Virus record (IMG/VR): IMGVR_UViG_3300003322_000571
Span: 62,001-126,000 of that record
Length of the DNA: 64,000 bases
Reading direction: 5' to 3' (one strand)
The notes under the pieces are model-generated. The model searched no databases. It was not told the DNA's origin and saw only the letters and a list, made by a program, of their open reading frames with translations. The position numbers were made by a program, and so were the translations under genes. How positions within the stretch are numbered: the first letter of the stretch is position 1; each line of letters begins with the position of its first letter. Positions 293-23,677 of the stretch are shown here, one piece after another.

Positions 293-390
293 GCCAGCGT
301 TTCTAATATTGGCCTTAGGGGTGCCCTTATAAAGCACTAAGACCCGTCTAGATCAGGCGGTTAATGTGGGTTCGATTCCCATCGCTGGTA
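293..390 (+). tRNA. tRNA with anticodon UAU (Ile/AUA by anticodon) and a long variable arm
   Basis: Acceptor GCCAGCG/CGCTGGT with discriminator A390; D-arm TCTAA/TTAGG; anticodon arm GTGCC-CTTATAA-AGCAC; variable stem CCGTCT/AGGCGG; T-arm GTGGG-TTCGATT-CCCAT. CCA is not encoded. Confidence 0.88.
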
Positions 391-434
391 CACACAACCC
401 TAATATTTCTGTTGGGGTAACGTACTCAACCATA

Positions 435-440
435 TATACT
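435..440 (+). promoter_or_regulatory. sigma70-type -10 element (TATACT) for the small-RNA transcript starting at ~447
   Basis: TATACT ends 6 nt before the first paired base of the Y-like RNA; no clear -35. Confidence 0.5.
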
Positions 441-446
441 TTCTTC

Positions 447-515
447 AGCTGTTGCGTAGTTCAAGGGTTACTTCTTTTGGTGAAACTATCCCCTTGACGT
501 TTTAATCTCAGCTTT
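447..515 (+). ncRNA. candidate minimal Y RNA (Ro60 ligand)
   Basis: Terminal stem AGCTG(447-451)/CAGCT(509-513) with a U tail; helix GT[T]CAAGGG(459-467)/CCCTTGAC(491-498) with a single bulged pyrimidine, as in the GU[C]CGAG/CUUGAC Ro60 site of animal Y RNAs; 1.1 kb upstream of a Ro60 gene. Confidence 0.65.
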
Positions 516-526
516 AACATATGTAC

Positions 527-588
527 GCACGTGGGTGCAAGGTTAACTGTTCCCGTCTCATGACCGGACGTTAGTCTCCACGCTGCCA
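527..588 (+). ncRNA. tRNA-like remnant or mimic with a CAU-type loop, ending in CCA, with no T-arm
   Basis: GCACGTGG/CCACG[C]TGC closing stem, GGTTAA D-loop-like segment, CTCATGA (557-563), CCA at 586-588, followed by a terminator. Confidence 0.4.
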
Positions 589-599
589 ACTTTTGGTTG

Positions 600-640
600 A
601 AGCCCTGGTATGCAACACTGCTACCAGGGCTTTTCCTTTT
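600..640 (+). terminator. intrinsic terminator of the RNA cluster
   Basis: AAGCCCTGGTA...TACCAGGGCTT followed by TTCCTTTT. Confidence 0.8.
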
Positions 641-652
641 TGGAGAAAATAA

Positions 653-1057
653 ATGTCGCTAGGTACAATTAAAGATGTCGTAATTGCTACGGTGGATGTC
701 GCTAATCTCAACAATCGCGTTTACCCAAAGAACGTGATTGAAGAAGCTGTTCGTCAGCGTGTTCATCCGATTTTCGGCCGAGTCGGTATGCCGGAAGCAG
801 GATCGTCTTGTGAGGTCGACCTTCGTGATGTATCACATCAAGTTACCGATCTCCGAATCACCGAAGATGGTAACTTGACTGGCACAGTTGTCGTCCTTGA
901 CACGCCTCCCGGTAGGTTGCTGACATCATTGTTGACAGAGAACCTCGACATCACCTTCCGCATGGCAGGATATGGTGATCTAATTGATAAGGATGGATAC
1001 ACAGAAGTGACCAACTTTCGTCTATCATCGATCAATGCTGTCGCAGACGGTGCTTGA
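653..1057 (+). CDS. T4 gp21-like prohead protease paralog, catalytic residues lost
   Basis: NLNNRVYP, GRVGMP (cf. GELNHP), VSH, LDTPPG, TFRMAGYG (cf. GVSSRGLG), SINAV (cf. GVDAV). Confidence 0.8.
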   Translation: MSLGTIKDVVIATVDVANLNNRVYPKNVIEEAVRQRVHPIFGRVGMPEAGSSCEVDLRDVSHQVTDLRITEDGNLTGTVVVLDTPPGRLLTSLLTENLDITFRMAGYGDLIDKDGYTEVTNFRLSSINAVADGA

Positions 1058-1075
1058 TCTCATTAAGGGTCAACC

Positions 1076-1375
1076 ATGAAACTCCTCGAAGAACTTGAAG
1101 CACAGTTTACTGATGGTCGTCAACTGTCTTCTGAACTGTTTGGTTACATCTTGCGTTGGTATCAAACAGGTGAGATCGACAAAGTTGATGAGCTGCTGAA
1201 GTCGATCGAGTTCAAGCCCACGATGCTGCATGTTGCTGCTGGCGTGATCCGTATCACAGCAGGCTGGCGACACCTTCTTCCGTCTTGGGAAGAAGCAAAG
1301 GATCGGGCGGTGTTGGCGATCACGGAAAGTGGTCATGATCCTCACAAGCTGTTAATGGGAGTTCGTCCGTTATGA
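1076..1375 (+). CDS. hypothetical protein
   Basis: SD present; stop overlaps the next start. Confidence 0.7.
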   Translation: MKLLEELEAQFTDGRQLSSELFGYILRWYQTGEIDKVDELLKSIEFKPTMLHVAAGVIRITAGWRHLLPSWEEAKDRAVLAITESGHDPHKLLMGVRPL

Positions 1376-1560
1376 AACGTGACATCAAAGATCATCCGTT
1401 ATTGAAAACGATGACGGCTGAGCAACTGTTGCAAATGCTCGTTGATGTTCGAGAAGTTGCATGGGTCGAAGGCCAAGATGGACGAACGAAAGAAGATTTT
1501 TACAACGCTTTAACGCAAATTTGTCGCATCACACGTGATGTTGACAACTACCATTTTTAA
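1372..1560 (+). CDS. hypothetical protein
   Basis: ATGA coupling with the previous ORF. Confidence 0.65.
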   Translation: MKRDIKDHPLLKTMTAEQLLQMLVDVREVAWVEGQDGRTKEDFYNALTQICRITRDVDNYHF

Positions 1561-1573
1561 CTGGAGAAACGAT

Positions 1574-3250
1574 ATGTCAAAACTCAATCCAACTGGTCGT
1601 AACGTTACGACAAACATTGTTGCGGTTGCTGCGAACCGTGGTGAACAGCTTGCTGTTTCTGCGAATGGCAACTTGCAATTCAAGAAGGACTCCTACCAGA
1701 CGTTGTACGAAACAACTGTTTCGACGATGCTTGGCAAGGGCAACCAACTGAATTCTGCTGATGCGCTTGTGCAAAAGCTGAAGGCGTCCGTTCGTTCTGT
1801 TGTTGCTGATGGCGCCAGCTCATTCGACTTCATTGCGAACCTCGCAATCCACGCACGTACGGAGATGAACGTCCGTACGATCCCAATCGTTCTTGTGGTT
1901 GAATTTGCGAAGGCGCTCGCCGATCAGCGTCAACCGTTGGTTGCACGTGTTGATGCGATTGAACAAGAACTGACTACAGCTCGTAAGGCTAAGCGTGCGA
2001 CTTCGTCAATCGTTGAGCGCCTGACTGCAGCTCGCGAAGACGCTGAAATCTACACGTATGGCAACATGCGTCAGCTCGTCAATGACGTGATTCAGCGTGC
2101 CGACCAGATCACTGATCTGTACGCATATGCACTGCAAGTGTTCGGTGGCAAGAACAAGATCCCGATGGCGATCAAGCGTGGTGTTGCTGATGCTTTCAAC
2201 AAGTTCAGCGAATACGCGTTCGCGAAGTACAACCGTGACGGTGCTGTCAAGTTCCGTGACGTCCTTCGTATCGTTCACCCAACTGCTTCGACGATCAAGC
2301 AAGGCGAAATCTTTGACAAGATCATGAAGGATACGCTTTCCGTCCCGTACACTTGGGAAACTGAGTTGTCGGCCAACGGTCAGAAGCCAGTTGCAGAACG
2401 TCTGACGCAGAAGCAGCTGTGGACGCAGCTCGTCACGTCTGGTAAGGTCGGTTACATGGCGTTGCTCCGCAACCTGCGTAACATCATCAGTGCTGGTCTT
2501 GATGACGATGTTGTCAAGAAGCATGTTCTCGATGTGATCTCCGATCCTGCACGCGTTGCAAAGAGCAAGCAATTGCCGTATGACTTCATTGAAGCATACA
2601 ACATCGTCAAGCCACTTGACGGTCGTTTCGCAACCGCAGTGTCGAAGGCACTTGATGCTAGTGCTGCGAACTTGCCAGAACTTGGTAAGCGCGTGTGGCT
2701 GATTGTTGACTACTCCGGCTCGATGGGTCATGGTCCGACTTCTGCATTCGGCGGTGGTGTGTTCCTCGCTTCGGCATTGCTGAAGGCTGCAGGTTCGACT
2801 GCTTCTCGTCTTGCTGTGACGTTGTTCGGTTCGACTGCATTGACGTTGAAAGACGTTGATACGAACCATTCGATGCTCGGTCTCCAGCAGATCCTCGAAA
2901 GCTACCGTAAGGATGGCATCAGCGGTTCGACGAATTTCCGTGCAGCTCTTGACCAGAAGTCTCAGCTCGGTTTCGAACCTGACACGATCATTGTGATCAC
3001 TGACGGTGAAGTCAATGGCTTCCCGTACGGCGTGATCAAGAACGTTGCAGGTCGTAGCGTGATGAAGATGGCAGTCAACATGTCTGTTGCAACATCGACT
3101 CCGATGTCGCAGCATGACGGCTGGTATTCAATGGCAGGCTGGTCTCCAGCTATGTTCAAGTGGATCCCGGCAATGCGTGACGCCGGTTCTGTAATCGAAC
3201 AGCTTGCTGTTCCTTACAAGGGTGTCCCTTCAGCTAAGGTTGAAGAATAA
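1574..3250 (+). CDS. rsr: Ro60/Rsr-like TROVE + vWA RNA-binding protein
   Basis: TROVE features (IQRADQIT, KRGVADAFNKFSEYAFAKY, RDVLRIVHP, TWETELS, GYMALLRNLRN, SKQLPY) plus vWA MIDAS (DYSGSM, GSTNF, ITDGE). Start set at the ATG after GGAGA. Confidence 0.93.
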   Translation: MSKLNPTGRNVTTNIVAVAANRGEQLAVSANGNLQFKKDSYQTLYETTVSTMLGKGNQLNSADALVQKLKASVRSVVADGASSFDFIANLAIHARTEMNVRTIPIVLVVEFAKALADQRQPLVARVDAIEQELTTARKAKRATSSIVERLTAAREDAEIYTYGNMRQLVNDVIQRADQITDLYAYALQVFGGKNKIPMAIKRGVADAFNKFSEYAFAKYNRDGAVKFRDVLRIVHPTASTIKQGEIFDKIMKDTLSVPYTWETELSANGQKPVAERLTQKQLWTQLVTSGKVGYMALLRNLRNIISAGLDDDVVKKHVLDVISDPARVAKSKQLPYDFIEAYNIVKPLDGRFATAVSKALDASAANLPELGKRVWLIVDYSGSMGHGPTSAFGGGVFLASALLKAAGSTASRLAVTLFGSTALTLKDVDTNHSMLGLQQILESYRKDGISGSTNFRAALDQKSQLGFEPDTIIVITDGEVNGFPYGVIKNVAGRSVMKMAVNMSVATSTPMSQHDGWYSMAGWSPAMFKWIPAMRDAGSVIEQLAVPYKGVPSAKVEE

Positions 3251-3282
3251 CACTCGTTGAAGGTCAACGACCAACGCAAGAT

Positions 3283-3310
3283 AATAGCCCCGAAAGGGGC
3301 TATTCCTTTT
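3283..3310 (+). terminator. intrinsic terminator after Ro60
   Basis: AATAGCCCC-GAAA-GGGGCTATT-CCTTTT. Confidence 0.8.
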
Positions 3311-3322
3311 GGAGAATACAAA

Positions 3323-3748
3323 ATGGACAACAGAATTTTCAATGTCAACGGACGTGGCCTATCGATGTTGACGTCAACGCTTAAGCTAGCGTTTTGGCAA
3401 AATGCAGGATGCTATGACAAGAGTCAAGACACTGAAACAGTCAAGGGATACACCGTCGAAAAAGACAAAGGCTTGATTTTGCTCTGGGCTGTTGACGAAA
3501 AAGATCCATCACATCAAAAATTCATCGCACCGTTGACAGCTGAAGCCGTCGCACCGCTCGTTGATTTGTGGCTGAAGTCAGACGAAGCGAAACAAATCCC
3601 GTTTGAGCGATGGGAGGATGATTGCGATCATGACGGACACAACACTCTCGGTTGGCGTGTATATTGTGAAGATTGGGGCCATGTAGGAAGGGCAGGATGG
3701 CATGCAACAATTGCAATCAAGCCTGTTTATCTGTGGCACGGCAAATAA
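3323..3748 (+). CDS. hypothetical protein
   Basis: GGAGA SD before ATG 3323; Trp/Gly-rich C-terminus. Confidence 0.75.
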   Translation: MDNRIFNVNGRGLSMLTSTLKLAFWQNAGCYDKSQDTETVKGYTVEKDKGLILLWAVDEKDPSHQKFIAPLTAEAVAPLVDLWLKSDEAKQIPFERWEDDCDHDGHNTLGWRVYCEDWGHVGRAGWHATIAIKPVYLWHGK

Positions 3749-3813
3749 GGGGATAGGTAACTCCTCAACTATTACCTGTAAGTAACGATAACCATAACTA
3801 AAAAGGGTCACTT

Positions 3814-5136
3814 ATGTCAAGTCATGTATTGACGCTCTTCAACCCGATTGTTAGAGCGATTAAAAAGGGATACGTTCAGTATCAGAATCGAAAAGAAGAT
3901 AAAGCGTGGAACACTCTCCGTGCGGAAGAACTTGCAAAACTCGATAGTAAATCTCATAATTGGTACACCGTATTGGTCGATAATCAACTGAAGACAGTTC
4001 GTGGCCAAAAGGAATTGAACGCGAACCGCCAACAAAAGGTTGATGCATCGTACTTCGAATTCTTGTTCAAACTGGGATGCAAGGTTGCACGAGAGTATGC
4101 TGTACTACCAAACATCATCGGCATGCAGCCGTTGCATAGTCCTGTTGGTTTGGTGTATCACATGGAGTACACACAAAAACCAGTCACTTCAGAGCAAAAT
4201 GATGTTGGAAGTGCCGATATCGGTAAGTATCGCCTTGAAGTGATCAGTCATGCTGTCGTTGCATTGACTGAAAGGTTGAGCACCCACGTTGATCCTAACG
4301 TAGCTACTGTCCTGGGACAGAAGGATAAGACACTAGTTGACAAGTTAGTTGACGTTCTCGGGGGAGAAATCGCTCGTGAAATGCTGATTGACATTCTTAA
4401 CGATTTGAGACATCTCGGTCGTCAGAACAGAAATCACTTTGAAGTCATCACCGCATCTGACAGTCATAAAGCAGTATATCTCAACAAAATCTGCAATGAG
4501 ATTGCTGCAGAAACACGACGAGGCCCTGCGAATTGGATTATCGCATCGATTTCAACGGTTTCGAAATTGCAAAGTGCGCCGTTCTCATACTTTAGCTCTG
4601 GTAAGTCCAACCGTGATAGCAGTTTGCTGTTAATGCACGTTGGTCGGCTTAATGGAGTAATTGAAGTTTACGCTTCAACAGAGGTCAAAGACGATGAGAT
4701 TTTGATTGGCTACATGGGCGGTAACGGCGCCACAGATACAGGTTACGTATTTGCTCCATATATTCCTGTTGTTCCAGGTAATGTTGTACTTGATCCTGTA
4801 ACACTTGAGCCGATGGTTGAATTCATGACTCGCTACGGTAAAACCGCATTTAAGAATCTGTCGGACGATTTTGGCAACCTTGTAATCCCACGTCATTCTA
4901 CAGGTGAAAAATACTACCGCATTGTTGAATTCGCAGAACCTAAAGAAGGCGTATACGATCCAACCGCGCTCGTTGAAGATTTTGTGTTCCCTGCGACTAA
5001 AGAACCTCAGTTTCTTGCACCTCTAACAGAGCAATTGCTTGGTAAATCGAACCTTAATATCGAAGAAGACTCGTCTGTTGAGTTGAAAACAAACCTTCCA
5101 GATAGTACTGAGGTGAACGATAAACCGTTCGTATAA
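3814..5136 (+). CDS. divergent T4 gp23/gp24-family capsid protein paralog
   Basis: IIGMQPLHSPVGLVY, TRRGPANWIIAS, GRLNGVIEVY, LIGYMG...DTGYVFAPYIP, DPVTLEP...FMTRYG. Confidence 0.85.
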   Translation: MSSHVLTLFNPIVRAIKKGYVQYQNRKEDKAWNTLRAEELAKLDSKSHNWYTVLVDNQLKTVRGQKELNANRQQKVDASYFEFLFKLGCKVAREYAVLPNIIGMQPLHSPVGLVYHMEYTQKPVTSEQNDVGSADIGKYRLEVISHAVVALTERLSTHVDPNVATVLGQKDKTLVDKLVDVLGGEIAREMLIDILNDLRHLGRQNRNHFEVITASDSHKAVYLNKICNEIAAETRRGPANWIIASISTVSKLQSAPFSYFSSGKSNRDSSLLLMHVGRLNGVIEVYASTEVKDDEILIGYMGGNGATDTGYVFAPYIPVVPGNVVLDPVTLEPMVEFMTRYGKTAFKNLSDDFGNLVIPRHSTGEKYYRIVEFAEPKEGVYDPTALVEDFVFPATKEPQFLAPLTEQLLGKSNLNIEEDSSVELKTNLPDSTEVNDKPFV

Positions 5137-5154
5137 CAATAAGGAATAAAAACC

Positions 5155-5325
5155 ATGTCCAATCAAGTTACTTTCCCAAAGGGCAAGCAAGTCAATCGCA
5201 GTGGTGAACGCACTCGTTTGACGCGTCAAACGACCGTCACTGTTATCCGTAGCGAACCAGCTCGTGACGGCAAGACTCGCGTGTTCTGGAAGTCGCATCG
5301 CGGCGAAGCTAACGCACTCGTCTAA
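5155..5325 (+). CDS. small basic protein, 56 aa (not in track)
   Basis: AAGGA SD, MSNQVTFPKGKQVNRSG...; terminator follows. Confidence 0.7.
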   Translation: MSNQVTFPKGKQVNRSGERTRLTRQTTVTVIRSEPARDGKTRVFWKSHRGEANALV

Positions 5326-5346
5326 TCACAATAGACATTGATCATC

Positions 5347-5372
5347 AACACCGCCCTCGTGGCGGTGTTTTT
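5347..5372 (+). terminator. intrinsic terminator
   Basis: AACACCGCC-CTCGT-GGCGGTGTT-TTT. Confidence 0.8.
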
Positions 5373-5406
5373 GTTCCTGTTTGTTTTCCCCTGCAACTAT
5401 AAGATA

Positions 5407-5681
5407 GTCCGTGAAATACCGGGCGCAATTATGGCTTTGGGAGGTTAGCGTTCGTGCTAATATACCATTCGTTAGGCGGCTTGCAGCGCATAGAACGATA
5501 AACGGCGGAGGGATCCAGGCGTCAATGCCTCCCTTGACTGAAGCAAAACTGATTGACTAACCTTTGATAAAGGCGGCGGGGTACGGCTCTGCTAGTGACC
5601 GGCTGGCCTAACTTCGTGTTGCATAACTACGCTGGGAATCCCGGCTATACCTCCATCGTTTGCATGAGATAACCGGTGGAC
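5407..5681 (+). ncRNA. candidate ~275-nt structured RNA of unknown family
   Basis: No credible ORF in the gap; nested helices 5407-5422/5673-5681, 5423-5433/5622-5632, 5471-5477/5606-5612; possible pseudoknots 5521-5526/5552-5557 and 5440-5449/5644-5654; -10-like TATAAGAT at 5398-5405. Confidence 0.5.
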
Positions 5682-5696
5682 ATTTAAGGAGAGATT

Positions 5697-6257
5697 ATGA
5701 AAGAGATTGAGCGAAAATTCTTGGTTAACTCTGCTCAGTTCAACAGAGACATCAGTGTGCTCGAGAACTACGGAGTGGACATTGTCAAGTATTCGATCAT
5801 GCAAGGTTACTTGTCGACGGGTATTGATATGCCGATTCGCATCCGGCATCGATCGCATTTTGATCCAGTTGCCGTTGCAACGGTCGATGCTTACACGATG
5901 ACTGTTAAGGCTAATCGTACTGGTATCACGTGCGATGAGATCGAGTTCGATATCCCTGGTGATAAGTTTAATCAGCTGTTTAGGCTTTGTGGTGATAACG
6001 TTCTGGTAAAGTCGCGTTATGTCGTACCTTATCGAGGCAGTATTTGGGAAGTTGACATGTTTCATGGGGACTTACAAGGCCTTGTTGTTGCGGAGATTGA
6101 ATTGCAACATGAGGATGATCTTTTCGTACATCCTGTGTGGGTTGATACTCAAGTAACTGCCGACTCGCGGTATGCTAATGCGAACCTCGTGAAGCAGACG
6201 TTTGACATCCTAAGTAACGAATTGGTATGGAAGAATGTTGAACGATTTAGGGTTTAA
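5697..6257 (+). CDS. CYTH-domain (triphosphate tunnel) protein
   Basis: EIERKFLV, IMQGYL, RIR, KSRY, WEVDMFHG..GLVVAEIEL. Confidence 0.9.
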   Translation: MKEIERKFLVNSAQFNRDISVLENYGVDIVKYSIMQGYLSTGIDMPIRIRHRSHFDPVAVATVDAYTMTVKANRTGITCDEIEFDIPGDKFNQLFRLCGDNVLVKSRYVVPYRGSIWEVDMFHGDLQGLVVAEIELQHEDDLFVHPVWVDTQVTADSRYANANLVKQTFDILSNELVWKNVERFRV

Positions 6258-6274
6258 AGGTTAAAGTCACCAAC

Positions 6275-6472
6275 ATGAGCAAACCACACTATCACAAAGA
6301 CGAACGCGGCATTCTGCAAAAGTGCTATCACGGTGCACAGAATTTGCTGACCGATTACAAGTTTTGGATCGGCGTCACATTGAGTTTCCCTCTCGAACAT
6401 TTCATCTGGGAGAAGCTGTGGCCTTTCTATCTGATCTCCGAATGGCTCGGTCTAATTGACCATCTCCACTGA
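6275..6472 (+). CDS. small membrane protein
   Basis: Hydrophobic FWIGVTLSFPLEHFIWEKLWPF segment. Confidence 0.65.
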   Translation: MSKPHYHKDERGILQKCYHGAQNLLTDYKFWIGVTLSFPLEHFIWEKLWPFYLISEWLGLIDHLH

Positions 6473-6645
6473 TGGACGAGTTTAATCCGTACGATCCTGA
6501 GCTTGCGCAACAGATCACAGAACATGCACAGAGATTACTAGATGGTCTTTTGAAGAGTTCCCATCTGCAAAGTAACTCTCCTGTCCAACAGTGGTTCGAA
6601 GCCAATCCACAACTACCTTTCAATGATTTCTGGAATCCAAAATGA
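6472..6645 (+). CDS. hypothetical 57-aa protein (not in track)
   Basis: MDEFNPYDPELAQQI...; translationally coupled at both ends. Confidence 0.55.
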   Translation: MDEFNPYDPELAQQITEHAQRLLDGLLKSSHLQSNSPVQQWFEANPQLPFNDFWNPK

Positions 6646-7790
6646 GCAAATTTGCTGTTGAAGTCGTCCGTATCCGCGCAATCGAACCGATCACCGGAGC
6701 TGACGCAATTGAACTCGCTGTTGTTGGTGGCTACCGTTCTGTCGTTAAGAAGGGTGACTACAAAGTCGGCGATCTCGCCGTGTACATTCCTGAACAAGCA
6801 ATCGTCCCTGATTGGTTGCTCGAAAGGATGAATCTCACTGGTCGTCTTGCTGGGACGAATAAGAACCGCGTAAAAGCAATCAAGCTTCGCGGTTGTCTGT
6901 CACAAGGTTTGCTGATTCCCGTCAAGCATGTTGCAGCTTCCGGTGCGAACTACATTCAGAATGATGTAAGTCTGATTCCTGTTAAGGAAGGCGATGACGT
7001 TGCTGATTTCCTTGGTATCGTTAAGCATGAAGTGCCGATCCCCGCACACCTTGCTGGTGAAGTGTACAACGCAGGTAGCCACTTGACTGTTCCGTACGAT
7101 ATCGAGAACTACAAGAAGTTCGTCGATGTGTTTGAAGATGGTGAAGAAGTCGTGTTCACCGAAAAACTGCATGGCACATTCACCGGTATCGGTATTCTGC
7201 CGCGTGGTGATTGGGAGGAAAAGCACTTCCTCAGCCGTTTCGTTATCTTCAGCAAGGGACTTGGTGCACGAGGTCTGTGCTTCAAGGATTGCGATAACAA
7301 CGCAGACAATCTGTACGTTCGCACGCTGATGGAGTCCGACATCTTCTCTCGTCTGTCTGACCTGATGGAGGAGATGGAAGAAGAGCACGGCTTTGATCGT
7401 CCTTTGTTCCTGCTCGGAGAAACGTTCGGTGCAGGTGTACAAGACTTGCAGTACGGTAACCTGCCGGCTTCGTTCCGCCTGTTTGACGTATGCGTTGGCT
7501 ACCGCGGTGATCAGTTCTTCTTCGACTACGAAGGTCGTGTCCGCCTCGCGAACCATCTTGAAATTCCGATGGTTCCGATTCTGTACAAGGGTCCGTTCAG
7601 CCAAGCGGTGCTCGATCAGTACACGAATGGCAAGGAAACGGTTTCTGGTAAGGAATCACACATCCGCGAAGGTGTTGTGATCACTCCTGTCGTTGAACGT
7701 GAACATCCTGAACTCGGCCGTGTGATCTTGAAGTCTGTCTCTGCAGACTACCTGCTTCGCAAGAATGAAAACGCAACGGAGTACAACTGA
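6642..7790 (+). CDS. RNA ligase, DRB0094/Rnl5 family
   Basis: N-terminal IEPITGADAIE module; motif I TEKLHGT, GETFG, FDV, EGVV, LKSVSADYL. Confidence 0.92.
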   Translation: MSKFAVEVVRIRAIEPITGADAIELAVVGGYRSVVKKGDYKVGDLAVYIPEQAIVPDWLLERMNLTGRLAGTNKNRVKAIKLRGCLSQGLLIPVKHVAASGANYIQNDVSLIPVKEGDDVADFLGIVKHEVPIPAHLAGEVYNAGSHLTVPYDIENYKKFVDVFEDGEEVVFTEKLHGTFTGIGILPRGDWEEKHFLSRFVIFSKGLGARGLCFKDCDNNADNLYVRTLMESDIFSRLSDLMEEMEEEHGFDRPLFLLGETFGAGVQDLQYGNLPASFRLFDVCVGYRGDQFFFDYEGRVRLANHLEIPMVPILYKGPFSQAVLDQYTNGKETVSGKESHIREGVVITPVVEREHPELGRVILKSVSADYLLRKNENATEYN

Positions 7791-7969
7791 TGAATAACGT
7801 CTTAGTAGGGTACGAGGGAAGTGCTGAAGTTGACATCAGCTACTTCTATTGCCCGTACATCCCAGGACAACCTATTCCTGTTGATGTGTGGGATCACCGT
7901 GCTGTTAAGAGGCCAACTGATATCCAGCGCCGGATCATGGAAGCGGTTCAACGTCCTCAACTGTATTGA
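7790..7969 (+). CDS. 59-aa protein carrying a gp23 major-capsid motif (not in track)
   Basis: MNNVLVGYEGSAEVDISYFYCPYIP...; start overlaps the ligase stop (TGATG). Confidence 0.7.
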   Translation: MNNVLVGYEGSAEVDISYFYCPYIPGQPIPVDVWDHRAVKRPTDIQRRIMEAVQRPQLY

Positions 7970-8035
7970 ACCCTAAAGTTGAATAAAACTTTCAGGTCAA
8001 ATACAGTTCACCAACTTTCAACATAGAGGTCATTT

Positions 8036-9133
8036 ATGAACCGTCTTCCTTTTGGTCAGCAACAGACCACAACGGCACAACCAGTTGACATGAGTGCGTT
8101 CATTCAAGTGAACCCGACTCCTGCTCAGCCGGTCGTCGTTCATCAACCGCAGACGCGTGCACTGACTGTGATCAGTGATAAAGACATCCAGAACTTCGGG
8201 ACGGCGTCGACGAATCGGATCTCTGCAACGTCGCAGAAGATTCTCGCTGGTACGAAGGCCTCTGCAGTCGATGACTTTGGCGACAAGCTGAATGAGCTCG
8301 TTGCTACGACAAAGAAGCTCGATCCTGCGGATATCGGCAAGCCTAGTCTGATCAAGAAGCTGTTCGGGATCGGCTCCAGCGTCAAGGATCAATTCCAAGC
8401 GCAGTATCAAACCGTTGAACAGCGGATGAATACGCTGATCGCGGAGATTGATTCGATGGCGAAGCTGATGGAGCAACGAATCGATGATCTCGAGACGATG
8501 TACAAGGAAAATGAGGATGCGTACAAGCAACTCAGCCAAGACATCGCTCAGATCAACAGTATCGTCGCGACGATGAAGGCTGATCTTGCAGCACAACCAA
8601 CGCCGACTGATCCGATCGAAGCGCAGCGTCTCAATGACTATCAGGAACTGATCGACCGGCTCGAAAAGCGTGCTGATGATCTCGAACGTGGAAAGCAGCT
8701 CGTCATCCTGTCGCTGCCGGAAATTCGGATTGAGCAGACGAACAAGCGCAATCTCGTTGCAAGTATCGCAACGCTGAAGAGCACGACGATTCCGGCTTAC
8801 CAAGGTCTGTTCTCGCGTTACATCCTGGCGATGGAAACGAAGAAGGGCAACCAGGTCGTCGCTGCTTTGCAGGATGCAACTGATGAAGCGTTCCGCAAGC
8901 AAGCTGACCTCGTTCGTCAGAATGCGGTTGACTCTGCGAAGGCTCAACAACGGTCTGTCGTGACGACGGAGACGCTGATTCACTGCCGTGATCAGATGCT
9001 TGCAACTCTCGACGACGTCAAGAAGATCAATGACGCTGGCCGTAAGGCACGTCAAGACGCTCGTCCGCAACTCGAACAACTGGAACAGTCGCTGATCGCA
9101 CGCGCTGCTCCGCAACAACTTTCTCACAACTGA
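8036..9133 (+). CDS. telA: toxic anion resistance protein (TelA/KlaB family)
   Basis: Coiled-coil protein with IQNFG, LIKKLFG, QYQTV, RLEKRADDL, LPEIRIEQ..N..L...I, TIP. Confidence 0.85.
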   Translation: MNRLPFGQQQTTTAQPVDMSAFIQVNPTPAQPVVVHQPQTRALTVISDKDIQNFGTASTNRISATSQKILAGTKASAVDDFGDKLNELVATTKKLDPADIGKPSLIKKLFGIGSSVKDQFQAQYQTVEQRMNTLIAEIDSMAKLMEQRIDDLETMYKENEDAYKQLSQDIAQINSIVATMKADLAAQPTPTDPIEAQRLNDYQELIDRLEKRADDLERGKQLVILSLPEIRIEQTNKRNLVASIATLKSTTIPAYQGLFSRYILAMETKKGNQVVAALQDATDEAFRKQADLVRQNAVDSAKAQQRSVVTTETLIHCRDQMLATLDDVKKINDAGRKARQDARPQLEQLEQSLIARAAPQQLSHN

Positions 9134-22535: not shown

Positions 22536-23192
22536 ATGGGCACAATGACACAAGAAAACCGTGAAGTTGTTGCCCGTGCTCTTCGTGTCAATTACGGACT
22601 CGTCGTTCATTGTTACAAGTTTAACAAGGAAACGATGGACACGATCCGTGAGATGGTTTCTGTTGGACAAAAGCCATACGATCCGAAGAACGCTGACTTT
22701 GTTGGTGACACACTAGATCGACATCCTTGGAGCTGTTATGGCAATAACCAAGAGATCGTTGCTGCGATGACTTTAGTTCATCATGAGAGTGTGTGGCCAG
22801 AACATGTCAATTTCGCTCGTTCGAAGTTCGATCAGAATACGAAGAAAGTTGACCTCAATATCAACGGACGATCGTTTCAAGTAAAGACCGCCAAACGTGG
22901 TGCTCAGCATTGGTTCGTTCCAGAGAACGATCTGATCGGTGAAGCAGATATGATGCTTGTCGTAGATGCTGCACGTGGACTGATGTATGAATTTGATCGT
23001 GCTCCTTTCAGACGCAACATGAAAGAGCAAATGGATATTGGTGGTCCGTATGATCAATGGCGAGGTGAGCAAGGTTGGTTCGTCGATACCAGCGAAATTG
23101 ATTTTGTCACCACCTATACGATTCCTGCAGGTGTTGCGATGACTTACCTTGAAGGTGACATAATGGTTTATAATGACGGGCTGAAACTATGA
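22536..23192 (+). CDS. putative PD-(D/E)XK nuclease
   Basis: KKVDLNINGRSFQVKT motif. Confidence 0.45.
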   Translation: MGTMTQENREVVARALRVNYGLVVHCYKFNKETMDTIREMVSVGQKPYDPKNADFVGDTLDRHPWSCYGNNQEIVAAMTLVHHESVWPEHVNFARSKFDQNTKKVDLNINGRSFQVKTAKRGAQHWFVPENDLIGEADMMLVVDAARGLMYEFDRAPFRRNMKEQMDIGGPYDQWRGEQGWFVDTSEIDFVTTYTIPAGVAMTYLEGDIMVYNDGLKL

Positions 23193-23677
23193 AGAACAAA
23201 TCAACACGAATCATGAGGCAAATGGTAGTCGATCAGATTACTAAGGGCCGTGCAGAGTATCAAGCAGGTGGAGATCCACATATCGAAGTGTTTGGACCGG
23301 ACGGCAAGTCTGGTTATATCAACTTGCTTAACGAACAACAATCGCTCCCTCAACTTGACAACCAGTTCAATACTCTACCAACGAGCTGCTACGGTAGTGT
23401 GTTGTCGTTTGAAGAAGTTGTTGACATTGTCAAAGCGGAACGTCAATACCAAGCATCGAAGTATAATGAACAACCGCAATCACTTCCCGGCTTTTTGCTG
23501 ATTCTCCAAAAGGAGATTGAAGAAGCAATTGACGGATGGATGAAGGGAGTTAATACTGGCAGGGATTCACCGTTGAATGAAGTGGTTCAGATTGCTGCAA
23601 CCGCTGTTGCATGTATTGAACGTTACGGTGCAACAGGTATCACAACGAACACGAACGACGAGCCGCAGTATCGATAA
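23189..23677 (+). CDS. MazG-like helical NTP pyrophosphatase domain (C-terminal)
   Basis: AERQYQ..KY.EQ, ILQKEIEEA, EVVQIAATAVACIE. Confidence 0.55.
   Translation: MKNKSTRIMRQMVVDQITKGRAEYQAGGDPHIEVFGPDGKSGYINLLNEQQSLPQLDNQFNTLPTSCYGSVLSFEEVVDIVKAERQYQASKYNEQPQSLPGFLLILQKEIEEAIDGWMKGVNTGRDSPLNEVVQIAATAVACIERYGATGITTNTNDEPQYR

What the first reader, a model, noticed from the sequence alone, without database searches (positions are those of the whole stretch)
293..390. tRNA with an Ile-type UAU anticodon on a type II (long variable arm) body
Seen: a 98-nt cloverleaf with anticodon TAT, a 6-bp variable stem, A discriminator, C-A mismatch closing the anticodon stem and no encoded CCA. Established: bacteria normally read AUA with lysidine-modified tRNA(CAU); long variable arms are typical of Leu/Ser/Tyr/Sec tRNAs; bacterial LeuRS relies on A73 and tertiary shape rather than the anticodon. 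Inference: this is a TilS-independent AUA decoder that survives attack on host tRNA-Ile2, a Leu-charged AUA reader, or a nuclease decoy.
Basis: partly seen in the sequence, partly recalled or inferred. Interest (0 to 1): 0.6.

Follow-up and report, generated by a model that had tools for sequence, protein, structure and literature searches.

The report
Two-headed phage isoleucine tRNA gene
This is a real tRNA gene of a widespread phage- and plasmid-borne family in which the supposed long variable arm is a second, GAU-type isoleucine anticodon arm, so one RNA can fold into two alternative tRNA cloverleaves; I found no published description of this design.

Summary
Window 293-390 (+) is a 98-nt tRNA: Rfam tRNA gives 32.4 bits against a cut-off of 29. 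It has a CUUAUAA loop, a C31.A39 mismatch, A73 and no encoded CCA. ARAGORN misses it.

It is not a Leu/Ser/Tyr-type class II tRNA. I collected 91 distinct homologues from lytic phages of Escherichia, Klebsiella, Pectobacterium, Vibrio and Xanthomonas, from IMG/VR contigs, from Xanthomonas plasmids and from genomic islands. In them the extra arm is a 5-bp stem with a 7-nt loop, YAGAUAA. That matches an ordinary tRNA-Ile(GAU) anticodon loop except for A at position 33.

This arm is preceded by a second copy of the D-stem 3' strand (NAGC-A) and followed by a class-I-length 5-nt variable loop. Two mutually exclusive cloverleaves therefore share one acceptor stem, one T arm and one D-stem 5' strand:
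- Fold A has anticodon UAU.
- Fold B has anticodon GAU.

Both are conserved and roughly isoenergetic.

Best reading: an isoleucine tRNA that decodes AUA with the UAU head, with the GAU head supplying the IleRS identity that U34 lacks. The structure is shown. The function is inferred. The window copy is the most divergent member. Interest is high.

The parts
293..390 (+). Whole tRNA gene (98 nt), a member of the UAU/GAU two-arm family
   Evidence: Rfam tRNA 32.4 bits. Family model R1 96.7 bits.
293..299 (+). Acceptor stem 5' strand. It pairs with 383-389 (G1.U72 wobble). A390 is the discriminator.
   Evidence: All 7 pairs show double changes across 91 homologues and 99.7% of cells pair. A73 is present in 85/86.
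302..305 (+). D-stem 5' strand (UCUA), shared by both folds
306..315 (+). D loop AUAUUGGCCU with G18 G19 (311-312). A308 forms the Levitt-type tertiary pair with U365.
   Evidence: The 15:48 pair covaries in 91/91 (A:U 48, G:C 43).
316..320 (+). D-stem 3' strand, copy 1 (UAGG), plus G26. Used in fold A.
   Evidence: In fold A across the family, 10:25 is paired in only 20/91, 12:23 in 84/91 and 13:22 in 40/91. The window has U10.G25.
321..337 (+). Hairpin 1: stem GUGCC/AGCAC with the C325.A333 mismatch, and loop CUUAUAA with anticodon UAU at 328-330 and U33
   Evidence: The loop core YUUAUA is invariant, even in the scan that left it free. The 31:39 pair is mismatched in 64/91.
338..343 (+). 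Linker UAAGAC. Bases 339-342 (AAGA) are D-stem 3' strand copy 2 and C343 is the second 'position 26'. Used in fold B.
   Evidence: In fold B, 10:25, 11:24 and 12:23 are paired in 91/91. The window's U302:A342 replaces the family's G:C, a double compensatory change.
344..360 (+). Hairpin 2: stem CCGUC/GGCGG and loop UAGAUCA (GAU at 351-353). The family consensus loop is YAGAUAA.
   Evidence: The stem is fully paired in 83/86 and covaries. Loop 2 was AGAUAA in 25 of 26 sequences found without constraining it. The window is the exception, with C at the position-37 equivalent.
361..365 (+). 5-nt spacer UUAAU, a class-I-length variable loop in fold B. U365 is position 48.
   Evidence: The spacer is 5 nt in 68/86.
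366..382 (+). T arm: GUGGG, loop UUCGAUU, CCCAU (G49.U65 wobble in this copy)
391..652 (+). Structured non-coding spacer downstream, ending in a GC hairpin plus U tract. It may be co-transcribed. It is not shown to belong to the tRNA.
   Evidence: MFE -82.5 against -60.4 kcal/mol for shuffles, z -5.07. No Rfam family matches.

Best explanation
Window 293-390 encodes a functional or recently functional tRNA of a mobile-element-borne family. In this family the module 'D-stem 3' strand + N26 + anticodon arm' of a class I isoleucine tRNA is tandemly duplicated. The RNA has one acceptor stem, one T arm, one D-stem 5' strand and one D loop, but two heads.

- Hairpin 1 carries a canonical U33 anticodon loop with UAU.
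- Hairpin 2 carries the loop of tRNA-Ile(GAU), G34 A35 U36 A37 A38, but with A33.

Depending on which copy of the D-stem 3' strand pairs with G10-C11-U12, either head takes the anticodon-arm position.
- In fold A, UAU is in place and hairpin 2 looks like a long variable arm.
- In fold B, GAU is in place with a normal 5-nt variable loop, and hairpin 1 hangs out of the D loop.

Proposed mechanism (inferred, not shown): the tRNA is charged with isoleucine and decodes the rare AUA codon through the UAU head without needing TilS. The GAU head, presented in fold B, gives proteobacterial IleRS and probably the t6A37 machinery the identity set that a U34 anticodon lacks.

The window copy is the most divergent member. 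It leans towards fold A and has lost A37 of the GAU loop, so its GAU head may work less well.
For: SHOWN
1. It is a real tRNA.
2. The family is widespread. It occurs in about 25 annotated phages from five or more virus families, about 100 IMG/VR contigs, 38 Xanthomonas plasmids and sporadic islands: 3 of 301 genomes sampled around the genome holding L053 (order-level sample), next to KfrA and OLD+UvrD genes.
3. Hairpin 2 is a 5-bp stem with loop YAGAUAA. Ordinary tRNA-Ile(GAU) genes in the same sequences have YUGAUAA.
4. The linker supplies a second D-stem strand. Pairs 10:25, 11:24 and 12:23 form in 48/48 sequences found without constraining the linker and in 91/91 overall. There is a U:A double change in the window, and 13:22 appears as C:G, U:A, G:C and A:U.
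5. The GC-rich plasmid variant shows the literal duplication, GAGC-G-arm then GAGC-A-arm.
6. In silico removal of either module gives a sequence ARAGORN calls a class I tRNA: Ile(tat) in 86/86 and Ile(gat) in 85/86. The full length is mostly missed.
7. The folds are near-isoenergetic: B minus A is +0.14 +/- 1.6 kcal/mol, and B is lower in 48/86.

SUPPORT FOR THE FUNCTION
- A73 is present in 85/86 and CCA is encoded in 83/86.
- E. coli IleRS charges UAU tRNA poorly, while M. mobile IleRS has about 100-fold greater relative preference for it (PMC3575796).
- The anticodon, A73 and t6A37 are strong Ile determinants and U12:A23 is a minor one (PMC9976931).
- t6A needs 36-UAA-38 (PMC13276492). Hairpin 2 keeps this in 85/86, whereas hairpin 1 has C or U at position 38 in 45/86.
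- The commonest neighbours are the rare-codon tRNAs Arg(tct) and Leu(taa). Eight loci also carry a separate class I tRNA-Ile(gat), which would make a GAU decoding role redundant.
- T5 uses the CAU route for AUA, not plain UAU.
- This phage has no IleRS, no TilS and no TilS-type CAU tRNA.
Against: - There is no expression, processing, charging or modification data. No RNA run holds this phage.
- Plain class I tRNA(UAU) genes are common in IMG/VR: at least 90 unique in a truncated scan. UAU therefore does not in general need a helper arm, and their hosts are unknown.
- The nearest-neighbour energies ignore tertiary structure.
- Fold B's three core pairs hardly vary, so true covariation rests on few events: one U:A at 10:25, and G:C and A:U at 13:22.
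- The conserved AGC could serve another purpose.
- A33 in the GAU loop is unexplained.
- In the window copy the GAU loop reads UAGAUCA, which lacks the UAA motif, and fold A is favoured by 3.4 kcal/mol.
- AUA is only 4% of Ile codons (2.4 per 1000) in this phage and 12.5% in PhiM1, so demand is modest.
- Whether a ribosome tolerates either extra arm is unknown.
Confidence: 0.45

Rival explanations
1. Plain fold-A tRNA-Ile(UAU). IleRS charges it directly and it decodes AUA. The extra arm is a tolerated relic of a duplication, or a structural or protective appendage, for example an antideterminant against a host nuclease or a U34-modifying enzyme. It has no role in aminoacylation, and fold B is never populated.
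For: Rfam and the GenBank annotators fold it this way. Hairpin 1 has the canonical U33 loop. Class I tRNA(UAU) genes without any helper arm are common in viral contigs. The window copy favours fold A by 3.4 kcal/mol.
Against: A relic would not keep loop 2 invariant (25 of 26 sequences found without constraining it), a covarying 5-bp stem, an invariant AGC complementary to G10-C11-U12, and a 5-nt spacer across phages of many families, plasmids and islands. The fold-A D stem is poor: G.G at 10:25 in most, and only two Watson-Crick pairs in nearly half. E. coli-type IleRS handles UAU badly (PMC3575796).
Confidence: 0.22
2. Fold B is the working tRNA: a tRNA-Ile(GAU) with A33 that reads AUC/AUU. 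The UAU hairpin is an insertion in the D loop with some other role, such as a decoy or a protein handle.
For: Fold B has the better-conserved D stem, a fully paired anticodon stem (83/86), A26, a canonical 5-nt variable loop and the full Ile identity loop. ARAGORN itself reads the GC-rich copies through this arm.
Against: A33 replaces the near-universal U33 in every copy. Loop 1 (YUUAUA) is also invariant and looks like a true anticodon loop. Eight loci carry a separate class I tRNA-Ile(gat) next to it, and the commonest neighbours are rare-codon tRNAs. A phage with one or two tRNAs gains little from an AUY reader.
Confidence: 0.1
3. A mischarging adaptor like nematode nev-tRNA-Ile(UAU) or bacterial allo-tRNA(UAU). 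LeuRS or SerRS charges it through the long arm and A73, so AUA is read partly as Leu or Ser.
For: It combines an extra arm, A73 and a UAU anticodon. nev-tRNA-Ile(UAU) is leucylated in vitro (PMC3333845). UAU is the commonest allo-tRNA anticodon (PMC5389517).
Against: - The acceptor/T geometry is 7/5, not 8/4 or 9/3.
- The arm's linkers are unlike the Leu, Ser or Tyr arms.
- The arm carries an Ile anticodon loop.
- Half the family has G15:C48 rather than A15:U48. By my recollection, not checked here, E. coli tRNA-Leu uses A15:U48.
[quoted passage not shown] The family's A73 therefore does not fit a Ser-type discriminator.
- Lytic phages with a single tRNA would pay a proteome-wide cost.
Confidence: 0.07
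4. It is not an adaptor. It could be a decoy or sponge for a host anticodon nuclease or for IleRS, or a ligand of the neighbouring Ro60/Rsr-like protein, by analogy with Y RNAs that carry tRNA-like domains.
For: It displays two Ile-type anticodon loops. A TROVE+VWA gene lies 1.1 kb downstream in the window. In KP13-26 a Ro60-vWA-like gene and YrlA-like hits lie 2-4 kb away.
Against: Acceptor-stem covariation, A73 and encoded CCA in 83/86 point to aminoacylation. Most carriers are 43-50-kb phages or plasmids, and in the flanks I examined (about 2.5 kb each side; the whole genome for PhiM1) no gene is annotated as Ro60/TROVE. Those genes were not scanned against Pfam. No Rfam YrlA hit occurs in the window.
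Confidence: 0.06
5. The window copy specifically is a decaying or retired gene, whatever the family does.
For: It is the most divergent member. It is the only one with C at the position-37 equivalent of loop 2. Its linker is GAC instead of GCA, it has a G49.U65 wobble and no CCA, and it sits alone 15 kb from the phage's tRNA clusters. AUA is rare in the phage.
Against: All stems are still intact. The 10:25 change is compensated in fold B and improves fold A. It scores 96.7 bits on the family model. Many other tRNAs of this phage also lack CCA.
Confidence: 0.1

Closest known systems
Class I bacterial or phage tRNA-Ile(GAU)
   Same: Fold B has its features: G10:C25, C11:G24, U12:A23, A26, a 5-bp anticodon stem, loop Y-N-G-A-U-A-A, a 5-nt variable loop, R15:Y48, a T loop UUCGAUU, A73 and CCA.
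   Different: Position 33 is A, not U. A roughly 30-nt insertion (copy 1 of the D-stem 3' strand plus the UAU hairpin) sits in the D loop after G19.
Class I tRNA-Ile(UAU), e.g. Mycoplasma mobile tRNA-Ile2 (PMC3575796) and many IMG/VR phage genes
   Same: It has the UAU anticodon in a canonical CUUAUAA loop and would read AUA without TilS.
   Different: Those are ordinary 72-78-nt tRNAs. M. mobile needs a specialised IleRS (Arg865). This family adds a GAU arm, and its 31:39 pair is usually mismatched.
tRNA-Ile2(CAU to lysidine) of bacteria and of T4-like and T5 phages
   Same: It would do the same job, decoding AUA as Ile. It is also phage-borne, as in T5 tRNA-Ile2.
   Different: That route needs C34 and TilS. 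Here position 34 is U, and the phage has no TilS gene.
Class II tRNAs (Leu, Ser, Tyr, Sec)
   Same: An extra stem-loop lies between the anticodon arm and the T arm in fold A. Total length is 98-102 nt.
   Different: The extra arm has long single-stranded linkers and an invariant anticodon-like 7-nt loop, and it is preceded by a D-stem strand copy. The anticodon is not Leu, Ser or Tyr.
Nematode nev-tRNA-Ile(UAU) (PMC3333845) and bacterial allo-tRNA(UAU) (PMC5389517)
   Same: They also combine a UAU anticodon with a long extra arm.
   Different: nev-tRNAs have eukaryotic Leu-type bodies and are charged with Leu. allo-tRNAs have 8/4 or 9/3 acceptor/T geometry and Ser identity. This family is 7/5, and its arm is an Ile anticodon-arm copy.
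Anticodon-arm mimics that recruit a synthetase, e.g. the E. coli thrS operator (PMC9976931)
   Same: An anticodon-like stem-loop outside the decoding position could be read by the cognate synthetase.
   Different: Those mimics are mRNA regulatory elements. Here the mimic sits inside a tRNA and would promote its own charging. This is a hypothesis.

Membership tests
tRNA (Rfam RF00005) | Cloverleaf scoring at or above the curated gathering score | tested here: met
   32.4 bits against 29, model positions 1-71, at 293-390 (+).
tRNA (Rfam RF00005) | Helices supported by compensatory changes, plus elbow features (G18 G19, T loop UUCRA, 15:48 pair) | tested here: met
   21 of the 25 modelled pairs show double changes and 91-94% of cells pair. 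The 15:48 pair covaries in 91/91.
tRNA (Rfam RF00005) | Processed, CCA-tailed, aminoacylated and used on the ribosome | not testable with these tools
   No RNA run holds the phage. Indirect support: A73 in 85/86, CCA encoded in 83/86, and a phage CCA-adding-family gene.
UAU/GAU two-arm tRNA family (model R1, defined here) | High score on the family model, separated from ordinary tRNAs | tested here: met
   The window scores 96.7 bits. Members score 74.8 bits or more and other tRNAs 45 bits or less.
UAU/GAU two-arm tRNA family (model R1, defined here) | Loop 1 YUUAUAN, loop 2 YAGAUAA, and linker ending NAGC-N that pairs with positions 10-12 | tested here: inconclusive
   Loop 1 is met (CUUAUAA). 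The linker pairing is met through the compensated U10:A25 (AAGA-C). Loop 2 is UAGAUCA, one mismatch at the position-37 equivalent.
Class II (long-variable-arm) tRNA: Leu, Ser, Tyr, Sec | Variable stem begins 1-2 nt after the anticodon stem and ends 0-2 nt before position 48 | tested here: not met
   The 5' linker is 6-9 nt. The 3' spacer is 5-7 nt including position 48.
Class II (long-variable-arm) tRNA: Leu, Ser, Tyr, Sec | Anticodon of Leu, Ser, Tyr or Sec | tested here: not met
   UAU is invariant in loop 1 and GAU in loop 2.
Bacterial tRNA-Ile identity set (PMC9976931) | A73 and an NAU anticodon with A37 A38 | tested here: met
   A390 is the discriminator. Loop 1 is CUUAUAA. Across the family, loop 2 carries G34 A35 U36 A37 A38 in 85/86; the window's loop 2 has C37.
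Bacterial tRNA-Ile identity set (PMC9976931) | Minor determinants U12:A23, C4:G69 and C29:G41 | tested here: inconclusive
   U12:A23 is present in both folds. In the window, 4:69 is A:U and 29:41 is G:C in both hairpins. Across the family, 29:41 is C:G in 48/86 for hairpin 2 and 0/86 for hairpin 1.
Bacterial tRNA-Ile identity set (PMC9976931) | Charged by IleRS | not testable with these tools
   This needs biochemistry.
tRNA-Ile2 (lysidine type) | C34 (CAU anticodon) and TilS determinants | tested here: not met
   Position 34 is U. No TilS gene is present in the phage.
allo-tRNA (PMC5389517) | 8/4 or 9/3 acceptor/T-stem geometry | tested here: not met
   7-bp acceptor and 5-bp T stems, both covarying.
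Y RNA / YrlA (Ro60 partner) | Match to Rfam YrlA, with a Ro-binding stem formed by the 5' and 3' ends | tested here: not met
   No YrlA hit in the window at E up to 10 (bases 1-1200), E up to 1 (1000-9000), or at gathering score over the whole window.

The most novel reading that the evidence does not exclude
This is a bistable, two-headed tRNA. One 100-nt RNA switches between two cloverleaves by exchanging a 3-4-bp D-stem strand. In one fold it shows IleRS, and the t6A enzymes, a GAU-type identity head. In the other it shows the ribosome a UAU decoding head. That would uncouple synthetase identity from codon reading and give mobile elements a TilS-independent AUA decoder that works with an unmodified host IleRS.
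Probability: 0.3. Interest if true: 0.95.

Novelty: new variant of a known kind. Interest (0 to 1): 0.8.

Why it matters
In bacteria, AUA decoding normally depends on TilS, because IleRS and MetRS both read the anticodon and U34 is a poor IleRS determinant.

A mobile-element tRNA that carries its identity on a spare anticodon arm would be a third natural solution, beside lysidine/agmatidine and specialised IleRS. It would be the first natural tRNA I know of to separate the recognition anticodon from the decoding anticodon, and an example of functional conformational switching in a tRNA. It would also offer a ready-made scaffold for genetic-code engineering.

There are practical consequences even if the function differs:
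- ARAGORN misses these genes, and most GenBank phage records leave them unannotated.
- Records that do annotate them label them as ordinary tRNA-Ile.
- tRNA counts and codon-supply analyses of many phages and Xanthomonas plasmids are therefore off.

Tried and rejected
- ARAGORN at default and relaxed thresholds, with introns and in mitochondrial mode, never finds the right cloverleaf.
- The window flank gave no match against annotated phages. The TROVE protein found no close relatives in IMG/VR. No close relative of this phage is available, so local synteny could not be used.
- Y-RNA idea: the TROVE+VWA neighbour made me test whether the element is a YrlA-like Ro60 partner. There is no Rfam YrlA hit, and no Ro60/TROVE gene is annotated near the copies in the small phages I examined. 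I rejected this for the tRNA. It stays open for the structured spacer 391-652.
- Sequencing runs: only DNA contigs turned up, from a root metagenome (the likely source) and two soil runs. Contigs from the two independent soil runs (X2, X3) do not reach the tRNA, and there is no RNA.
- Leu/Ser identity was considered and rated low. See the rival explanations.
- 'UAU never occurs without the GAU arm' is rejected as a general rule. Class I tRNA(UAU) genes are common in IMG/VR. It may still hold for particular hosts: T5 uses CAU.
- Complete E. coli genomes contain no copy, so there is no PGAP isotype call to borrow.
- Extra pairing between the linker and the 3' spacer, or kissing between the two loops, was checked by eye only. 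Neither is consistent across members.
- Codon demand gives only modest support: AUA is 2.4 per 1000 codons here and 5.7 per 1000 in PhiM1.
- Literature searches found no description of this architecture. The library covers open-access papers only.
Full report
WHAT IS THERE

The window is bases 62001-126000 of a 350,089-bp, 48% GC jumbo-phage genome with direct terminal repeats, recovered from a root metagenome. ARAGORN finds 56 tRNAs and a tmRNA in two clusters elsewhere in the genome, but none in the window.

Rfam's tRNA model nevertheless matches 293-390 (+) over its full length at 32.4 bits (cut-off 29). This is the only Rfam hit in the 64 kb.
- a 7-bp acceptor stem with G1.U72;
- discriminator A390, with no CCA after it;
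- a CUUAUAA loop closed by a C.A mismatch;
- an extra stem-loop;
- a canonical T arm.

The missing CCA is not a worry. Many of this phage's tRNAs lack it, and the phage encodes a CCA-adding-enzyme-family protein.

IT IS ONE OF A LARGE FAMILY

BLAST against annotated phages, followed by IUPAC pattern scans, found homologues in these places:
- Xanthomonas phage Xoo-sp13 and Klebsiella phage KP13-26;
- T1-like coliphages (ESCO41, PCEc3, Opt-79 and others);
- Vibrio phages (WD615, Pylo, River4, 12VC501);
- Pectobacterium phages (PhiM1, Arno162, Wc4);
- about 100 IMG/VR contigs;
- bacterial assemblies, mostly Xanthomonadales;
- 38 Xanthomonas plasmids, where the sequence is identical across species.

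In bacterial chromosomes it is sporadic: 3 of 301 genomes sampled around the genome holding L053 (order-level sample). There it lies beside plasmid- or island-type genes, namely KfrA and an OLD+UvrD pair. No copy exists in 5,426 complete E. coli genomes.

Some records call it tRNA-Ile and most leave it unannotated. A covariance model built from 27 members separates the family (74.8 bits or more; window 96.7) from every other tRNA in about 1.1 Mb of fetched sequence (45 bits or less). The phage has a single copy.

THE STRUCTURE IS REAL

On 91 distinct sequences, the acceptor stem, both hairpin stems and the T stem all show compensatory double changes. 91-94% of cells pair, against 64-66% after shuffling and about 40-49% for slid controls. 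A D-loop purine covaries perfectly with the base just 5' of the T stem (A:U 48, G:C 43). This is the Levitt 15:48 tertiary pair of an L-shaped tRNA.

THE 'LONG VARIABLE ARM' IS A SECOND ANTICODON ARM

I parsed 86 unique members.

Hairpin 1:
- Its loop is Y-U-U-A-U-A-N. UAU is invariant, even in the scan that did not constrain it.
- Its closing 31:39 pair is mismatched in about 70% of members.
- Position 38 is C in 43, A in 41 and U in 2.

Hairpin 2:
- All five pairs form in 83/86.
- Its loop is Y-A-G-A-U-A-A. Among the 26 unique sequences found without constraining this loop, 25 have AGAUAA and only the window differs, with AGAUCA.
- Ordinary class I tRNA-Ile(GAU) genes in the same sequences have Y-U-G-A-U-A-A. 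Hairpin 2 is therefore that loop with A33 in place of U33.
- It is followed by exactly 5 nt in 68/86, the length of a class I variable loop, ending in the covarying Y48.

A SECOND D-STEM STRAND AND TWO ALTERNATIVE CLOVERLEAVES

The 6-9-nt linker between the hairpins ends in N-A-G-C-A. That tetramer is complementary to the D-stem 5' strand G10-C11-U12-N13.

Pairing of the D-stem 5' strand with each copy of the 3' strand, over 91 sequences:

| Pair | Copy 1 (fold A) | Linker copy (fold B) |
|---|---|---|
| 10:25 | 20/91 (mostly G.G) | 91/91 |
| 11:24 | 91/91 | 91/91 |
| 12:23 | 84/91 | 91/91 |
| 13:22 | 40/91 | 20/91 (C:G, U:A, G:C, A:U, U.G) |

- The fold B result for 10:25, 11:24 and 12:23 also holds in 48/48 sequences found without constraining the linker.
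- The one exception to G10:C25 is the window itself. Its U302:A342 is a double compensatory change.
- Fold A's numbers are, if anything, inflated, because one scan required the copy-1 strand.
- The GC-rich plasmid variant shows the origin plainly: GAGC-G-arm(UAU) followed by GAGC-A-arm(GAU). This is a tandem duplication of 'D-stem 3' strand + N26 + anticodon arm'.

Two mutually exclusive cloverleaves result:
- Fold A is the Rfam and GenBank reading, with UAU in the anticodon position and a pseudo-variable arm of 27-30 nt.
- Fold B is a class I tRNA with GAU(A33) in the anticodon position, A26 and a 5-nt variable loop. The UAU hairpin becomes a roughly 30-nt insertion in the D loop.

Two further results support this:
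- Deleting either module in silico gives a sequence that ARAGORN calls a class I tRNA: Ile(tat) in 86/86 and Ile(gat) in 85/86. It mostly misses the full gene.
- Nearest-neighbour energies of the two folds are about equal across the family. B minus A is +0.14 +/- 1.6 kcal/mol, and B is lower in 48/86. The window is the extreme fold-A case, at -26.0 against -22.6 kcal/mol.

WHAT IT MOST LIKELY DOES

This part is inference.

Acceptor covariation, A73 and encoded CCA point to an aminoacylated adaptor. Both heads are Ile-type (NAU-A37), and U12:A23 and A73 match the E. coli Ile identity set (PMC9976931).

Several observations point to AUA decoding by the UAU head:
- Hairpin 1 has the U33 loop.
- The commonest neighbours within 300 nt are the rare-codon tRNAs Arg(tct) (15 loci) and Leu(taa) (10 loci).
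- Eight loci carry a separate class I tRNA-Ile(gat).
- Several small phages carry this gene as their only tRNA or one of two.

Why keep a GAU head? Three published results bear on this:
- E. coli IleRS charges UAU-anticodon tRNA poorly. M. mobile needed a specialised IleRS, with about 100-fold greater relative preference for UAU (PMC3575796).
- t6A37 is a strong determinant for bacterial-type IleRS (PMC9976931).
- t6A37 requires 36-UAA-38 (PMC13276492).

Hairpin 2 keeps G34 A35 U36 A37 A38 almost invariably, while hairpin 1 often lacks A38. I therefore propose that fold B presents the GAU head to IleRS and the t6A enzymes, and fold A presents the UAU head to the ribosome. This would make a TilS-independent AUA decoder that works with an unaltered host IleRS.

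Two further facts are consistent with this. T5 uses a CAU (lysidine-route) tRNA-Ile2 rather than plain UAU. The window's phage has no IleRS, no TilS and no TilS-type CAU tRNA.

My confidence by level:
- real tRNA and family member: about 0.97;
- the two-fold architecture is a selected feature: about 0.75;
- Ile acceptor: about 0.7;
- AUA decoder: about 0.6;
- the identity-head switching mechanism: about 0.3.

CAVEATS

- There is no RNA evidence.
- Plain class I tRNA(UAU) genes are abundant in IMG/VR: at least 90 unique in a truncated scan, with hosts unknown. A helper arm is therefore not universally required.
- The core fold-B pairs hardly vary, so covariation proper rests on few events.
- A33 is unexplained.
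- AUA demand is modest: 4% of Ile codons here and 12.5% in PhiM1.
- The window copy has C at the position-37 equivalent of the GAU loop and leans towards fold A. It may be a weakened or retired member, or adapted to a different host.
- My search patterns fixed parts of the sequence. I report unconstrained subsets where it matters.

COMPARISON WITH KNOWN SYSTEMS

- It is a tRNA. The membership tests are met except the biochemical ones.
- It is not a class II Leu/Ser/Tyr tRNA, because the arm geometry and the anticodon fail.
- It is not a lysidine-type tRNA-Ile2, because position 34 is U.
- It is not an allo-tRNA, because its geometry is 7/5.
- It resembles nev-tRNA-Ile(UAU) only superficially.
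- Functionally it is closest to tRNA-Ile2, and mechanistically perhaps to synthetase-binding anticodon-arm mimics such as the thrS operator.

Five full-text searches of the open-access library found no description of a tRNA with a duplicated anticodon arm or of this phage family. I rate it a new variant of a known kind, with high interest.

No sequence here was taken for human.

Noticed in passing
window 391-652 (+): The 262-nt non-coding stretch just downstream of the tRNA folds far better than shuffles (-82.5 against -60.4 kcal/mol, z -5.07). It ends in a GC hairpin plus U tract at about 598-645 and matches no Rfam family. It could be a co-transcribed small RNA.
   Followed up: partly
window 1535-3250 (+): This is a TROVE + vWA (Ro60/Rsr-like) protein gene, sitting between a prohead-protease-like gene (653-1057) and the major head gene (3814-5136). 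No Y RNA/YrlA match lies nearby. The structured spacer 391-652, or the tRNA, could be its RNA partner, but this is untested.
   Followed up: partly
whole genome G000:C1, 332868-332944 and 344214-344286 (outside the window): ARAGORN calls two CUA-anticodon (amber-reading) tRNAs. TAG is the rarest stop among long ORFs (29 of 382). I make no claim of recoding.
   Followed up: no
whole genome G000:C1, 304515-304896 and about 22954-23316 (outside the window): The phage encodes a tmRNA with tag ANEGNFRLAA and a CCA-adding-enzyme-family protein. It has 56 ARAGORN tRNAs but no Trp(cca) call.
   Followed up: no
whole genome G000:C1, 34827-34901 (outside the window): One of the phage's ordinary tRNA-Ile(GAU) genes has loop UCGAUAA, with C33 instead of U33. 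Together with A33 in the two-arm family, this suggests that position 33 of Ile-type loops is under unusual pressure in phages.
   Followed up: no
L008 14087-14175: This is an 89-nt Leu-like class II tRNA with loop CCUAUGA, which ARAGORN calls Ile(tat). Its acceptor stem is poor. It lies 0.8 kb from a two-arm family member in the same IMG/VR contig and may be a Leu-bodied UAU tRNA or a pseudogene.
   Followed up: partly
L002 (Klebsiella phage KP13-26) 6035-7465 and 7759-8006: A DUF2828/DUF7788 (Ro60-vWA-like) gene is followed by two sub-threshold Rfam YrlA hits (40.1 and 32.5 bits against a cut-off of 69). They lie 2-4 kb downstream of that phage's two-arm tRNA.
   Followed up: partly
L010 12996-13090: This is a 95-nt tRNA-like gene with a CUUGGAA loop (UGG, Pro-type) and a roughly 26-nt extra region, another over-long phage tRNA. 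I did not check whether its extra arm mimics an anticodon arm.
   Followed up: no
L053 3397-7998 (Stenotrophomonas chromosome): The bacterial copy of the tRNA lies at the edge of an island that encodes a SEC-C-motif protein, a KfrA-like protein, and an OLD-family ATPase/TOPRIM protein plus a UvrD-like helicase, a Gabija-like pair.
   Followed up: partly
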